Assembly (NCBI GenBank): GCA_002269645.1
Contig: NIVC01001666.1
Coordinates: 62,001 to 126,000, forward strand
Origin: Macrostomum lignano
Lineage: Eukaryota
Direction of reading: 5' to 3'
DNA: 64,000 nt
Under the pieces are notes generated by a model that was not told the DNA's origin, searched no databases, and saw nothing but the letters and a program-made list of their open reading frames with translations. Shown one piece after another: positions 23,989 through 50,007 of this stretch. Position 1 is the stretch's first letter. Each line of letters opens with the position of its first letter. The position numbers and the translations under genes are program-made.

Positions 23989-26900
23989 TCATCCATTCAA
24001 CTTCGCTGCCTCCGTCGACGAGGTGCTGTCTTCGGGACTGGCCAACGGTGCGCTGCCGGCCCCGGTGATCGTGCAGCCGACTGTCTGGCCGAAGTCGCCA
24101 CCACCGTCTGGGACCGTCGGGCAGCTGACTGCACCGACTAGTAGTGTCGATGGAGCGGCCTGATGCTTGAGCAGCTGAGGCGATCGTCGAGGATGCAGCA
24201 TCGATGAAGGTTGGCACTGACGTCTGACCGGTAGGCACGTTTGCGGAGGCTGCTGATGCCTACCTGAAGCGCGGAGAGTTCAAGGAAGCTTATAAGTTAA
24301 GTATAAATAAAGGTCAGAGGCGAACACTGGTGTCTAAAGCATAACTCGTATCTAACATGCATAACGAATGTAAGTAAAAGTGAGTTTGAATTTTCTGCTG
24401 TCGGGTCCCTTGATAAATGGGATGGTGTCGGGTCCGTGAATAAACTGGGTGCTGTCGGGTCCGTGAATAAACTGGGTGCTGTCGGGTCCCTGAATAAACT
24501 GGGTGCTGTCGGGTCCCTGAATAAACAGGATGGTGTCGGGTCCCTGAATAAATTGGATGCTGTCGGGTCCCTGAATAAACTGGATGGTGTCAGGTCCCTG
24601 AATAAACTGGATGGTGTCGGGTCCCTGAATAAATTGGATGCTGTCGGGTCCCTGAATCAACTGGATGGTGTCGGGTCCCTGAATAAATTGGATGGTGTCA
24701 GGTCCCTCAGAAAACTGGATGGTGTCGGGTCCGTGAATAAATTAGATGCTGTCGGGTCCGTGAGTAAATTGGATGGTGTCAGGTCCCTGAATAAACTGGA
24801 TGGTGTCGGGTCCCTGAGCCCTAAAGAAAACAAATAGTCGTGCAACAAAACACTTATACCGCTAAAGTTCCTACTTGCTAAACGACCGTTGAGATAAAGA
24901 AAACGCCGATTCTTAAAAGAAAATAAAAAACGAAGTTCTTAAAGCTAGGTAAGCATGCATATGTACTGTGTTAATGAAGAACACTGAAGCTTCAGATCAT
25001 CGATACGAACAATCGGGTATCACTCACAAGTTGCACTAATAAATATTCCTCATAGCTGAAATGAGGCGTACAGATCGGTGTGCAATATATGTACAGACTG
25101 ATGGGCATACGGGTGCAGACACAGCATTGGTGTACATTGGTGATTTACGCACAGACAGGTGCAATGATAAAGTGCCTTCACATTAGGCTATAGCATACCT
25201 CCAGCACACGGAGACAGCTCTCTCCGCTCTAGTACAAAGCGCCCCACTGAGCCGTTCCCACCACTGTCGACTTCGGCGACATCCCCGGAGTTCGGCCAGC
25301 TCCGCTGCACTCGATACGGCTGCTCGCCCGGCGCCAAGCGACGCCGCATCGGCGTCGCCCGCAGTCGCTGACGTTGACATCGTCGTCTTGGCGTGCGGGG
25401 GTCTGGCTCCTCAACGACAAGGTCAAACTCTCCAGCGTCGTCGCCGCCGTCAACATCGCCGAGACGGCCGGCCAAAGCGGCCAGGGCTTGGCAGACAATG
25501 TCCGAGGCGGTAGCGCACGCGCTGACGCGCAGATCCACCGCACAACTGGGAGACGAGGCGGTGCAGTGCACACGAATGATGAACTCGACCGCGTCGTGTG
25601 GATGGGCAACTTTGCTGGATTTGCCAGCGCTGGTCGCTGGCGAGCCTCGCTGCATTGAAGGCGAGGCCATCGGCCTGCTTGGCCGTTGTCGGCGCAGGAC
25701 CAGCCGACTGGAGCGGCCACAGCTGATCAGGCCTGACACCTGGAGACAGCGTTTTTGATACACTTATAGGGTGTGTTGATTCTACAATAAGTAATGGCTT
25801 CACCAGAAGTTCTCTAGAGGTCGGAACTACTCAGAAGATTGACGAAAACTGCTCACCGGCTCAGACAATATGCAGGGCCGCGGCAGCGCTTTTACTAAGC
25901 CACCGGACGCCGGAGCCTCGAGCTTCTCGCTGTCACATATCGAACTACCGTCGGGCTCCTCAAATAGCACACAGTCGCTTAGGCTAAGACAGCGGCCAGC
26001 TTTACGCCGTGAAGGACCCAGCTGGGCCAGGGTTCGAGCCACGAGGTCGGACACCAGGCTGTCTGCAGGCAGGCTGACCATAAGAACGCCGCATCGCTCC
26101 GAGTTGCCACTGTACCCGGCCTCGCCCTCATTGAAGTTATCTAGGTCGAAGCCGTCCGTGTCGTTGGCGTCCTCGTTGTCACTGCAACTTTCGCTCTGAT
26201 CAGCATCGATTGAGCAGTGAACAGGCACAACAATGAGGCGCTGCTGAGAATCAGCTGCAGACTCCTGTCGGCCGCTCCTGGCCCGGTTTCGACTGCCAGG
26301 GACGTCACTCTGGGTCTGTTTCGGAGCAGCGAGAATGTCTTTCGTATTAGTTTGATCGGGCAGTGCCGCAACTCAAGGCGACAGTCGATCCACAGTCAGC
26401 GACACCTGAGCACGCACACGCACACTGATACGTACGCAAGCACACACTCGTACGGAGCGGCCCTGACTTTCTCATCGGCATGTGTGCACACTCTCTGTGC
26501 CCTGGGGGTTGGCTCTCATGGGTGCGAATCGACGGTAATCGAACCTGGAGTAATTAAGCACTACTACCCTGGGTTAACTCAGCACTCGGCTAGGATGAGT
26601 CCAATAGAATGAGTTTACAACAAATGGGCTAGAAATTCCATATGTCGCAGCACCATTAGCAACCAAAATAACTGCTTGAAAAAATTATTAGGCCACCTTG
26701 AAGGCCAATCGCTTTCTCGCGCTGTCCGACAATGACGCTTCAGGCTGCATCGAATAACCAACCGAGTTGCTGATGGCCGATTCGCTGGTTAACCTGCTGA
26801 AGTTAGCCTCCGTTGTGGAGTCCTCAGTCATTGCTGCAGAAGCCGCGGCCGTCTCGTAGTCGGTTCTCGTGAAGATCAGCAGCGTTGGCAGTTCTAGCGG

Positions 26901-50007: not shown

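What the first reader, a model, noticed from the sequence alone, without database searches (positions are those of the whole stretch)
23989..50007. Giant PLC-epsilon with a FERM module inserted between the REM and CDC25 halves of its RasGEF, plus a long helical N-terminus
Seen: 27 exons from 50007 to the stop at 23989 join in frame with matching phases (about 3,320 codons), so the upstream domains appear to be part of the PLC polypeptide. Order: helical-bundle-like, ARM-like, REM-like, FERM F2 ([16 protein letters not shown]), FERM F3 ([17 protein letters not shown]), CDC25, PH, EF, X, Y, C2, RA, RA. Established: characterised PLC-epsilons (vertebrate PLCE1, C. elegans PLC-1) have CDC25 as the first recognised domain and no FERM; REM normally abuts CDC25. 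Inference: a cortex- or junction-anchored PLC/Rap-GEF scaffold in which a PTB-like F3 lobe could couple receptor tails or PIP2 to both GEF and lipase activity. Similar unstudied invertebrate proteins may exist in databases; I could not check.
Basis: partly seen in the sequence, partly recalled or inferred. Interest (0 to 1): 0.75.

Follow-up and report, generated by a model that had tools for sequence, protein, structure and literature searches.

The report
Long-form PLC-epsilon with talin-like FERM lobes
The window holds the flatworm (Macrostomum lignano) copy of a giant phospholipase C-epsilon that carries ankyrin repeats, a split REM domain and two talin-like FERM lobes in front of its RasGEF; this build is real and shared by many invertebrates, was not detected in the chordate PLCE1 proteins examined, and no paper describing it turned up.

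Summary
On the minus strand, GT-AG exons from 49367 to about 25199 (or 23989) encode helical/ARM-like, REM, FERM F2, FERM F3, CDC25, PH, EF, X, Y, C2, RA and RA. A 1,085-nt ankyrin-repeat exon lies further upstream (53644-52560).

Profile and fold searches confirm the FERM similarity:
- Pfam FERM_M scores above its curated cut-off.
- A family profile hits talin F2-F3 at E 1e-14.
- Foldseek's top hits on both AlphaFold models are all talin heads.

No F1 lobe is present.

The single-polypeptide reading is supported by a 2,893-aa uninterrupted ORF with the same order on a metagenome contig, by database protein models of 3,268-3,844 aa named or uncharacterised as PLC-epsilon in ticks, aphids, nematodes, acanthocephalans, snails and starfish (shorter ones in a spider and an acorn worm), and by M. 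lignano protein models that span the key junctions.

Frog PLCE1 aligns only from CDC25 onward. Ank-REM-FERM-CDC25 GEFs without any PLC part exist in Capsaspora, a sponge and probably Nematostella, which suggests an ancient fusion.

This is an ordinary ortholog of an uncharacterised long form. The exons linking the ankyrin exon to 49367, and the 3' end, are unresolved. Any function for the FERM lobes is inferred.

The parts
52560..53644 (-). First coding exon found: disordered N-terminus plus ankyrin repeats (361 codons; ATG at 53644, donor AAG|GTACGT at 52559).
   Evidence: Open stretch 53818-52391. Pfam Ank 30 bits (cut-off 21.1) and Ank_3 23.1 bits (cut-off 22.3); Ank_2 and Ank_4 score below their cut-offs. 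tblastn with the L001 ankyrin ORF gives E 4e-10 at 53317-52862. Splice site read.
49368..52559 (-). Unresolved link between the ankyrin exon and exon 49367.
   Evidence: The 52559 donor leaves phase 2 and the 49367 acceptor needs phase 1. Alternative donors are 52587 (direct, in frame) and about 52581 (via 50007-49944). No homology support for any of them.
45105..49367 (-). Three exons (49367-49174, 46314-45532, 45351-45105) encoding a helical region and the conserved ARM-like block, including [14 protein letters not shown].
   Evidence: The junctions K|TCEAE and DP|HLLCLLLQ are collinear with L001, locust P0003 and M. lignano P0192. phmmer to orthologs gives 1e-33 to 1e-64. AF2 pLDDT is about 90 and all-helical. 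The only PDB sequence hit is Vac8 ARM repeats, weak at E 0.034.
40823..44539 (-). REM domain in two exons (44539-44367 and 41911-40823), split by a disordered insert of about 230 residues.
   Evidence: Pfam RasGEF_N gives no direct hit. hhalign (prob 99.9, E 3.7e-32) aligns both halves to the segment of P0067 that Pfam calls RasGEF_N at 38.3 bits. The junctions GNQ|VQLW and LLTD|PDIR are confirmed by M. lignano P0192.
39291..39900 (-). FERM F2 lobe in three exons (39900-39829, 39762-39541, 39392-39291) with a Gly-rich loop.
   Evidence: Pfam FERM_M scores 30.1 bits, E 6.6e-7, above its 23.8 cut-off, covering profile 7-112 of 112 on the spliced sequence. The talin F2 N-terminal helices align. 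M. lignano P0013 contains the 39900 exon; P0001 supports the 39291|37439 junction.
37016..37439 (-). FERM F3 lobe (PTB/PH fold), talin-like.
   Evidence: Talin-1 and talin-2 F2-F3 score E 1.3e-14 with the 10-sequence profile. AF2 gives seven strands plus a C-terminal helix, with 10-residue block means mostly 72-90. Foldseek's top hits are all talin heads, E 4e-6 to 1e-5, with TM up to 0.62 of the target.
33284..36446 (-). CDC25-type RasGEF catalytic domain in three exons (36446-36187, 34469-34324, 33781-33284).
   Evidence: Pfam RasGEF scores 57.7 bits, E 1.8e-15. PDB hits are RalGPS1, yeast Cdc25, SOS1/2 and Epac2 at 1e-15 to 1e-10. hhalign to frog PLCE1 CDC25 gives prob 99.9. The junction SSLEF|DLHRR is matched by the M. 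lignano paralog P0014 and by the uninterrupted ORF P0002.
31162..32369 (-). Two exons (32369-32018, 31758-31162) for the PH-like region. The acceptor of the second is uncertain.
   Evidence: No Pfam hit. Collinear with the PH region of L001 and Asterias.
28645..30890 (-). EF-hand-like region, catalytic X domain and the Ala-rich X-Y linker (exons 30890-30437, 30110-28645).
   Evidence: Pfam PI-PLC-X scores 209.6 bits and EF-hand_like 27.7 bits. The motifs [19 protein letters not shown] and SIENH are read in the sequence.
28142..28495 (-). Catalytic Y domain.
   Evidence: Pfam PI-PLC-Y scores 103.6 bits. tblastn to P0002 gives 52% identity.
26794..27584 (-). C2 domain in three exons (27584-27426, 27141-27039, 26938-26794).
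   Evidence: Pfam C2 scores 30.7 bits. Collinear with the L001 C2.
25199..26292 (-). RA1 (26292-25857, acceptor uncertain) and RA2 (25739-25199).
   Evidence: Pfam RA scores 22.5 bits, above the 21 cut-off, for RA2. RA1 is assigned only by position and by the motif RLIVVPVHC.
23989..24128 (-).
   Evidence: In frame from the donor at 25198. The sequence is low-complexity and has no homology support. The alternative is read-through to a stop at about 25191.

Best explanation
The region is one protein-coding gene of Macrostomum lignano. It is the ortholog of a 'long-form' phospholipase C-epsilon that is widespread in bilaterian invertebrates.

The protein has at least 3,345 residues. Its order is: ankyrin repeats, a helical/ARM-like block, a REM domain split by a disordered loop, talin-like FERM lobes F2 and F3 (no F1), the CDC25 RasGEF domain, and then the usual PLC-epsilon core (PH, EF, X, Y, C2, RA1, RA2).

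Shown here: the exon structure from 49367 onward, the domain identities, the collinearity with single-ORF and database protein models of relatives, and intact catalytic motifs of the lipase.

Inferred:
- It works like known PLC-epsilon. Ras or Rap-GTP on the RA domains recruits and activates PIP2 hydrolysis, and the CDC25 domain loads Rap to sustain the signal.
- The talin-like F2-F3 pair adds membrane or receptor-tail targeting (acidic phospholipid binding, or NPxY-type peptide binding in the F3 groove).
- The ankyrin and ARM part acts as a scaffold or autoinhibitory module.
- The N-terminal half (Ank-REM-F2F3-CDC25) is an older holozoan GEF cassette that was fused to a PLC core, and chordates later lost its front part.
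For: Gene model:
- Borders are GT-AG and exons join in frame.

Species:
- M. lignano UniProt fragment P0013 is 99% identical to the window's exons. P0192 is 83% over the best local alignment and reads the same exon by exon.

Single polypeptide:
- P0002 is a 2,893-aa uninterrupted ORF running from ARM to the C2 start on contig L001.
- The L001 gene has introns of only 57 and 66 nt, one at the same position as window 45532|45351, and encodes 4,214 aa in the order Ank to RA-RA.
- M. lignano models span the ARM, REM and F2 junctions (P0192, P0013) and the F3|CDC25 junction (P0014).
- The window model is collinear with L001 in five blocks.

Domains:
- Pfam finds X, Y, EF, FERM_M, RasGEF, C2, RA and Ank.
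- The family profile hits talin F2-F3 at E 1e-14.
- Foldseek's top hits on both AF2 models are talin heads.
- REM is supported through hhalign to a Pfam-verified RasGEF_N.

Spread:
- 43 cluster representatives score below 1e-30, including proteins from tick, spider, aphid, Trichinella, Auanema, Mesorhabditis, Pomphorhynchus, Asterias, Saccoglossus and snails.
- Of 10 orthologs, all have RasGEF plus X and Y, 8 have Ank and 8 have FERM_M.

Older cassette:
- Capsaspora, Oscarella and an environmental eukaryote have Ank-RasGEF_N-FERM_M-(PTB)-RasGEF with no PLC part. A Nematostella protein has its CDC25 match at 1910-2079 of 2,199 aa, which leaves no room for a PLC core, but I did not scan it.
Against: - There is no transcript evidence from this locus.
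- The link between the ankyrin exon and exon 49367 is not resolved. The best donor is out of phase with the 49367 acceptor. An ankyrin-less isoform, or even a separate ankyrin gene in this species, is not excluded.
- The M. lignano database models are fragmentary and disagree on two exons.
- Pfam does not detect RasGEF_N, FERM_C, PH or RA1 directly.
- The AF2 models have a mean pLDDT of only 62-65, and F2 is modelled with low confidence.
- The 3' end is uncertain.
- No ligand or lipid binding of F2-F3 has been tested. From my recollection of talin numbering, the residue at the position of talin R358 is Gln here, although the W359 position is invariant across the family.
Confidence: 0.85

Rival explanations
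1. Two neighbouring genes were joined by mistake: an Ank-REM-FERM-CDC25 RasGEF like the stand-alone ones of Capsaspora or Nematostella, followed by a separate PLC gene.
For: Stand-alone GEFs of exactly this build exist. Several database models of PLC-epsilon in insects, a sea spider and amphioxus begin at CDC25. There is no cDNA for this locus.
Against: The CDC25 exons are of the PLCE1 type, with prob 99.9 to frog PLCE1. The break would therefore have to fall between F3 and CDC25. That junction lies inside one uninterrupted ORF in P0002 and inside the M. lignano paralog model P0014. The link from CDC25 to X and Y is also one ORF in P0002. Protein models of at least 3,268 aa in seven species carry the whole order. 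Phases match at every junction.
Confidence: 0.05
2. The locus makes mainly a shorter protein that starts at Met 49365 (MEDLERS...), from an internal promoter or a trans-splice acceptor. The ankyrin exon would then be a separate gene or a rare alternative 5' exon.
For: The strongest donor of the ankyrin exon (52559) is out of phase with 49367. An ATG lies 2 nt after the 49367 acceptor. The candidate exon 50007-49944 starts at a good acceptor with no upstream partner in phase. From my own knowledge, trans-splicing is common in Macrostomum.
Against: In L001 the ankyrin repeats and the helical block are one ORF. In locust, tick, aphid, starfish and nematode models the ankyrin repeats are part of the same protein. 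In-phase alternative donors exist at 52587 and about 52581. The next gene upstream ends at 61.3 kb.
Confidence: 0.25
3. The FERM resemblance is a chance or low-complexity match and the region is only a helical linker.
For: Single-exon Pfam hits were below the cut-off: FERM_M 20 bits and IRS 18 bits. F2 has low pLDDT.
Against: The spliced F2 passes the Pfam cut-off. FERM_M is found in 8 of 10 orthologs. Talin hits are at E 1e-14 over F2 and F3. The top Foldseek matches are all FERM domains (talin, kindlin, KRIT1, merlin, moesin) at probability 1.00.
Confidence: 0.01
4. This copy is a decaying duplicate (pseudogene) of a functional paralog, since M. lignano carries a second copy at about 74% identity.
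For: Paralog fragments P0001 and P0014 exist. Nearly every intron holds a minisatellite. The 5' link is unresolved.
Against: No frameshift or stop occurs in 2,984 spliced codons. The catalytic motifs of X and Y and the conserved CDC25 and F3 residues are intact. Near-identical UniProt models exist for this copy.
Confidence: 0.05

Closest known systems
Vertebrate PLCE1 and C. elegans PLC-1 (the characterised PLC-epsilons)
   Same: CDC25 RasGEF, (PH), EF, X, Y, C2 and two RA domains come in the same order. The CDC25 is clearly of the same type: hhalign prob 99.9 and 33% identity to frog PLCE1. The lipase catalytic motifs are present.
   Different: The characterised proteins start shortly before CDC25. 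No F2-F3 is detectable in frog PLCE1, and only the CDC25 part matches in the amphioxus cluster. The window protein has about 1,450 extra N-terminal residues with Ank, ARM-like, REM and talin-like F2-F3. C. elegans PLC-1 itself was not examined here.
Predicted 'PLC epsilon-1' or 'uncharacterized' proteins of invertebrates (Rhipicephalus XP_075732545, Trichinella KRY51588, Adelges XP_050438660, Asterias XP_033632686, Pomphorhynchus KAI0989877, Bradybaena BFY97294, Pomacea, Schistocerca)
   Same: Same architecture and collinear sequence. These are the orthologs.
   Different: They differ only in species and in the length of the disordered inserts. None appears to have been studied: four literature searches found nothing.
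Talin head (F2-F3), also kindlin and KRIT1 FERM domains
   Same: F2 and F3 align by sequence (E 1e-14) and by fold (TM 0.6 of the talin F2F3 target). Shared motifs include YG..F.VKE, RLLGI, D.KTK and the Trp aligned to talin IKRWAAS.
   Different: There are no F0 or F1 lobes and no rod. The module is embedded between REM and CDC25. From memory of talin numbering, the R358 position is Gln. Binding partners are unknown.
Stand-alone Ank-REM-FERM-CDC25 RasGEFs of Capsaspora (CAOG_03360), Oscarella and environmental eukaryotes; probably also Nematostella (LOC5521422)
   Same: They are collinear with the N-terminal half of the window protein across ARM-like, REM, F2, F3 and CDC25 (hhalign prob 99.9, E 3.7e-32, 663 columns).
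   Different: They have no PLC core or RA domains. Some carry extra DEP or PTB domains. They are uncharacterised. The Nematostella protein was not Pfam-scanned; its placement rests on a CDC25 match at its C-terminal end.
Epac (RAPGEF3/4) and PDZ-GEF (RAPGEF2/6)
   Same: From established knowledge, these are Rap GEFs with another domain (RA, PDZ) between REM and CDC25. The window's CDC25 matches Epac2 at E 6e-11.
   Different: The inserted domain there is a ubiquitin-like RA or a PDZ domain, not F2-F3. They have no lipase.

Membership tests
PLC-epsilon | PI-PLC X and Y catalytic domains with catalytic residues | tested here: met
   Pfam X scores 209.6 bits and Y 103.6 bits. The motifs SSHNTYL, ELDCHDG, IYHG, SIENH and [13 protein letters not shown] are read in the model. 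Residue roles come from knowledge of PLC-delta1.
PLC-epsilon | CDC25-type RasGEF domain N-terminal to the PLC core, in the same polypeptide | tested here: met
   Pfam RasGEF scores 57.7 bits. hhalign to frog PLCE1 gives prob 99.9. The link is by in-frame splicing, and by a single ORF in P0002.
PLC-epsilon | Two C-terminal RA domains after C2 | tested here: inconclusive
   C2 scores 30.7 bits. One RA (RA2) scores 22.5 bits against a cut-off of 21. RA1 is not detected by Pfam and is placed only by position and motif. L001 and 8 of 10 orthologs have RA.
PLC-epsilon | PH domain and EF hands between CDC25 and X | tested here: inconclusive
   EF-hand_like scores 27.7 bits. PH is not detected by Pfam but is collinear with orthologs.
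FERM domain | F1 ubiquitin-like lobe | tested here: not met
   There is no FERM_N or RA hit. Only about 25 helical residues lie between REM-C and F2. The AF2 models show helices only between residues 537 and 713.
FERM domain | F2 acyl-CoA-binding-like helical lobe | tested here: met
   Pfam FERM_M scores 30.1 bits against a cut-off of 23.8, covering profile 7-112 of 112. Talin and kindlin F2 pieces align.
FERM domain | F3 PTB/PH-like lobe directly after F2 | tested here: met
   Talin F3 scores E 1e-14. AF2 gives a seven-strand sandwich plus a C-terminal helix. Foldseek finds talin F2F3 with TM up to 0.62 of the target. Pfam FERM_C is not hit, only IRS-type PTB at 16-18 bits.
RasGEF with REM (RasGEF_N) | REM domain upstream of CDC25 | tested here: inconclusive
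   No direct Pfam RasGEF_N hit at E<=0.1. Both halves align (hhalign prob 99.9 for the whole alignment) to P0067 residues 545-656, which Pfam calls RasGEF_N at 38.3 bits. Packing against CDC25 could not be inspected.
Ankyrin-repeat proteins | Tandem ankyrin repeats | tested here: met
   Pfam Ank scores 30 bits (cut-off 21.1) and Ank_3 23.1 bits (cut-off 22.3) in exon 53644-52560. The exon is homologous to the ankyrin region of L001. Its physical link to the rest of the gene is unresolved.
Armadillo/HEAT repeat proteins | Stacked helical repeats of ARM type | tested here: inconclusive
   The only PDB sequence hit is Vac8 at E 0.034. AF2 gives confident helices with pLDDT about 90. No fold match for this part could be read from the Foldseek lists, which FERM hits dominate.

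The most novel reading that the evidence does not exclude
PLC-epsilon began as a fusion of an older holozoan Ank-REM-(talin-like F2F3)-CDC25 Rap/Ras GEF with a PLC core. The long form found here is the ancestral bilaterian enzyme. Its talin-like F3 docks on NPxY-type tails (for example integrin beta) or on PIP2 membranes, so that adhesion receptors directly position a Rap-activating, PIP2-cleaving enzyme. Chordates later shed this targeting module.
Probability: 0.3. Interest if true: 0.7.

Novelty: new variant of a known kind. Interest (0 to 1): 0.5.

Why it matters
PLC-epsilon is studied almost only in vertebrates and C. elegans. In those systems the role of its own GEF domain and of its N-terminus is still unclear.

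A conserved long form carries ankyrin repeats, a true REM and talin-like F2-F3 lobes. A PLC-less version of that cassette exists in Capsaspora and a sponge. Together these give a concrete origin story for the enzyme.

They also give testable ideas:
- What does the F3 groove bind?
- Does REM regulate the CDC25?
- What replaced this targeting in chordates?

From my own knowledge, Macrostomum lignano is amenable to RNAi and transgenesis, so the locus is a practical entry point.

For genome annotation, the result shows that the ankyrin exon and the PLC exons should be modelled as one gene.

Tried and rejected
- My exon chaining by codon log-odds and splice scores over-split the gene at a low intron penalty (46 exons) and dropped real exons at a high one (22 exons). 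The final model was curated by hand against homologs.
- The first two word-indexed protein searches were weak. The F3 exon alone found only one M. lignano fragment. The 1,709-aa composite query was swamped by low-complexity candidates and returned three hits.
- P0001 is not on record in the contig index.
I re-ran it with exact fragments.
- Pfam gave nothing for the ARM-like, REM, PH and RA1 parts.
- A PDB profile search of the ARM/REM-N block gave only Vac8 at E 0.034.
- Foldseek on the 1,078-residue model listed only FERM hits in its top 50, so it could not test REM or ARM folds.
- Constrained chaining between the ankyrin exon and 49367 gave only marginal candidates, with scores near zero.
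- Four literature searches found no paper on FERM or ankyrin domains in PLC-epsilon.
- I rejected chance FERM similarity, a two-gene artefact and a pseudogene. The reasons are given under the rival explanations.
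Full report
**What is in the sequence**

The minus strand between about 53.6 kb and 24 kb contains GC-rich open stretches separated by AT-richer introns. Nearly every intron holds a minisatellite.

Pfam on single open stretches gave:
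- PI-PLC-X at 209.6 bits
- PI-PLC-Y at 103.6 bits
- EF-hand_like at 27.7 bits
- FERM_M at 20 bits and IRS-type PTB at 18 bits, both below their cut-offs

I chained candidate exons with a codon log-odds and splice-site score. I then curated the chain by hand against homologs.

The curated model has 23 GT-AG exons from 49367 to 23989. They join in frame without a stop and give 2,984 codons.

**Species and local support for the splicing**

- The F3 exon found M. lignano A0A1I8HPE4 (P0001) at 74% identity. Its sequence [20 protein letters not shown] fixes the junction 39291|37439.
- M. lignano fragment P0013 is 99% identical to the window. P0192 (83% over the best local alignment) reads the same exon by exon. 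The window is therefore M. lignano, and P0001 and P0014 come from a diverged second copy.
- P0192 reads through DP|HLLCLLLQ (45532|45351), GNQ|VQLW (45105|44539) and LLTD|PDIR (44367|41911).
- P0013 contains the small exon 39900-39829.
- The paralog model P0014 reads NSLEF|DLHRRN...HFPEEVA, which is the equivalent of 37016|36446.
- These are fragmentary gene models, not cDNAs, and they disagree on two exons.

**One polypeptide**

P0002 is a 2,893-aa uninterrupted ORF on ENA metagenome contig ERZ27333047 k141_362466 (locus L001; 15,240 nt, 40% GC). In one reading frame it runs through the ARM-like end, REM, F2, F3, CDC25, PH, EF, X, Y and the start of C2. Pfam on it finds:
- FERM_M at 24.7 bits
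- RasGEF at 62.4 bits
- PI-PLC-X at 209.3 bits
- PI-PLC-Y at 106.9 bits

Flanking ORFs on the same strand encode ankyrin repeats (840 aa) and C2 plus RA (485 aa). They are joined to the main ORF by introns of 57 and 66 nt. The first of these sits at exactly the position of the window intron 45532|45351: DPNHDP|HLLCLLLQ against DPNYDP|HLLCLLLQ. The complete L001 protein has 4,214 residues.

The window model is collinear with it in five blocks: Ank, ARM/REM-N, REM-C to CDC25, PH, and EF-X-Y-C2.

The L001 ankyrin ORF matches the window at 53317-52862. That match lies inside a 476-codon open stretch with an ATG at 53644 and a strong donor, AAG|GTACGT, at 52559. Pfam Ank scores 30 bits (cut-off 21.1) and Ank_3 23.1 bits (cut-off 22.3); Ank_2 and Ank_4 fall below their cut-offs.

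In L001, locust P0003 and 8 of 10 orthologs, ankyrin repeats are part of the same protein. The next gene upstream, a carnitine acyltransferase, ends at 61.3 kb.

The link is not resolved:
- The donor at 52559 leaves phase 2, while the 49367 acceptor needs phase 1.
That exon is in frame with 49367 but would need a phase-0 donor, possibly the weaker site at about 52581.
- A donor at 52587 would join 49367 directly in frame.
- An ankyrin-less isoform starting at Met 49365 is possible.

**The FERM claim**

Once the three F2 exons are spliced, Pfam FERM_M scores 30.1 bits (E 6.6e-7, cut-off 23.8) over profile positions 7-112 of 112.

A two-sequence profile (window plus P0002) hit talin-1 F3 in the PDB at E 3e-9. 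A ten-sequence ortholog profile hit talin-1 and talin-2 F2-F3 at E 1.3e-14. The alignment covers the F2 N-terminal helices, the F2 C-terminus and the whole of F3. It includes the motifs YG..F.VKE, RLLGI and D.KTK, and the Trp aligned to talin IKRWAAS, which is invariant in the family.

| AlphaFold2 model | Length | Mean pLDDT | F3 fold |
|---|---|---|---|
| Model 1 | 556 aa | 62 | 7 strands plus C-terminal helix; 10-residue block means mostly 74-82 |
| Model 2 | 1,078 aa | 64.5 | 7 strands plus C-terminal helix; 10-residue block means 72-90 |

Foldseek against the PDB put talin heads at the top for both models: ranks 1-25 for model 1 and ranks 1-24 for model 2. E-values start at 4e-6 to 1e-5, probability is 1.00, and TM reaches 0.62 of the 190-residue F2F3 target. 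Kindlin, KRIT1, merlin, moesin and myosin-VIIa follow.

There is no F1 lobe. No FERM_N or RA hit was found, only about 25 residues separate REM-C from F2, and that stretch is modelled as helices only.

**REM and CDC25**

CDC25 is clear:
- Pfam RasGEF at 57.7 bits
- PDB hits to RalGPS1, yeast Cdc25, SOS1/2, RasGRP and Epac2 at 1e-15 to 1e-10

Pfam RasGEF_N is not hit directly. However, several hits of the exhaustive search turned out to be PLC-less GEFs with the order Ank, RasGEF_N, FERM_M, IRS-type PTB, RasGEF:
- Capsaspora CAOG_03360, with RasGEF_N at 43.6 bits
- Oscarella pearsei
- An environmental protein, P0067, with RasGEF_N at 38.3 bits over residues 554-642

A Nematostella protein (LOC5521422, 2,199 aa) has its CDC25 match at residues 1910-2079. 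That leaves no room for a PLC core, but I did not scan it with Pfam.

hhalign of the PLC-epsilon N-half profile against P0067 gave probability 99.9 and E 3.7e-32 over 663 collinear columns. The window's [17 protein letters not shown]...[14 protein letters not shown] and [20 protein letters not shown]... fall on the two halves of P0067's RasGEF_N.

The REM here is split by a disordered insert of about 230 residues. The ARM-like label rests on confident helices (pLDDT about 90) and a weak Vac8 hit at E 0.034.

**Distribution**

The exhaustive profile search found 1,424 proteins at E<=1e-3 and 43 at E<=1e-30. Proteins in which F2F3 directly precedes CDC25 include the following:

| Organism | Length (aa) |
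|---|---|
| Rhipicephalus (tick) | 3,505 |
| Parasteatoda (spider) | 2,661 |
| Adelges (aphid relative) | 3,632 |
| Trichinella | 3,337 (named PLC epsilon-1) |
| Auanema | 3,482 |
| Mesorhabditis | 3,532 |
| Pomphorhynchus (acanthocephalan) | 3,560 |
| Asterias (starfish) | 3,526 |
| Saccoglossus (acorn worm) | 2,175 |
| Bradybaena (land snail) | 3,844 |
| Pomacea (snail) | 1,052 (isoform X4) |

Locust, planthopper, stick-insect and Meloidogyne fragments also match.

Pfam on ten orthologs found X, Y, RasGEF and EF in all 10, C2 in 9, and RA, Ank and FERM_M in 8 each. In Asterias the order is Ank 186-327, FERM_M 1274-1508, RasGEF 1656-1836, X, Y, C2, RA.

Frog PLCE1 aligns with the family profile only from CDC25 on. 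The amphioxus cluster matched only CDC25. C. elegans PLC-1 was not examined.

**How it most likely works**

Shown: the architecture, and intact lipase motifs ([36 protein letters not shown]).

Inferred from what is established for PLC-epsilon: Ras or Rap-GTP binds the RA domains and recruits or activates PIP2 hydrolysis, and the CDC25 domain loads Rap and sustains the signal.

Inferred from what is established for talin: F2-F3 binds acidic phospholipids and NPxY-type tails. Here it would place a Rap-activating, PIP2-consuming enzyme at particular membrane sites or receptors.

Whether the F3 groove is functional is unknown. The Trp is conserved, but the neighbouring Arg of talin is Gln here (numbering recalled from memory).

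The ankyrin and ARM part may act as a scaffold or autoinhibitory module. This is pure inference.

**Novelty**

The protein family is present in public databases as predicted proteins. Some are named PLC epsilon-1 and some carry precomputed FERM_M hits. I found no paper that describes ankyrin, REM or FERM domains in PLC-epsilon.

The window is therefore an ordinary ortholog of an uncharacterised long variant of a known enzyme. The wider point may be new but rests on predicted proteins only. That point is an old Ank-REM-F2F3-CDC25 cassette, fused to a PLC core and later truncated in chordates.

**Open points**

- The 5' link described above.
- The acceptors of the PH exon (31758) and the RA1 exon (26292).
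- The alternative donor at 39273, which would add six codons.
- The 3' end: a splice at 25198 to 24128-23989, or read-through to a stop at about 25191.

Noticed in passing
window 24399-56568 (for example 35004-36173, 39957-40741, 48415-49162, 50826-51668, 54360-55629): Nearly every intron of the gene, and the region upstream of it, holds a long minisatellite array (periods of 13-40 nt, up to about 90 copies). Many are open in several reading frames and mimic coding sequence.
   Followed up: partly
window 61315-63147, minus strand: The upstream neighbour is a choline/carnitine O-acyltransferase gene. Pfam Carn_acyltransf scores 113 and 86 bits on two exons. Its last exon ends near 61315.
   Followed up: partly
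window 12493-13518, minus strand: A downstream eIF5-like gene. Its W2 and eIF-5_eIF-2B hits fall just below the Pfam cut-offs.
   Followed up: partly
window 73-7168, minus strand: Exons of an alpha-2-macroglobulin / thioester-protein-like gene (TED domain 73.9 bits, MG2 54.8 bits). It runs off the window end.
   Followed up: partly
L001 (ENA ERZ27333047 k141_362466) 813-13580: An unidentified eukaryote in a metagenome has the whole 4,214-aa long PLC-epsilon gene with only two tiny introns (57 and 66 nt). One is at the same position as a Macrostomum intron, and the flanking peptide HLLCLLLQ is identical. The organism was not identified.
   Followed up: partly
Relatives P0064 (Capsaspora CAOG_03360), P0059 (Oscarella), P0065 (Nematostella LOC5521422), P0067 (environmental): PLC-less RasGEFs with Ank, RasGEF_N, FERM_M, PTB and RasGEF, sometimes with DEP or an N-terminal PTB. 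They are collinear with the N-terminal half of the window protein and look like the ancestor cassette. The Nematostella protein was placed by the position of its CDC25 match only and was not Pfam-scanned.
   Followed up: partly
M. lignano proteins P0001 and P0014 compared with window 39392-36187: M. lignano has a second copy of this gene at about 74% protein identity (F2b, F3 and CDC25 exons). This fits the known duplicated genome of the species.
   Followed up: no
UniProt names of P0013/P0192 and P0014: The M. lignano fragments of this gene are labelled 'RAB3GAP2_C domain-containing' and 'tRNA_int_endo_N domain-containing'. Neither label fits the sequence; they are probably annotation artefacts.
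   Followed up: no
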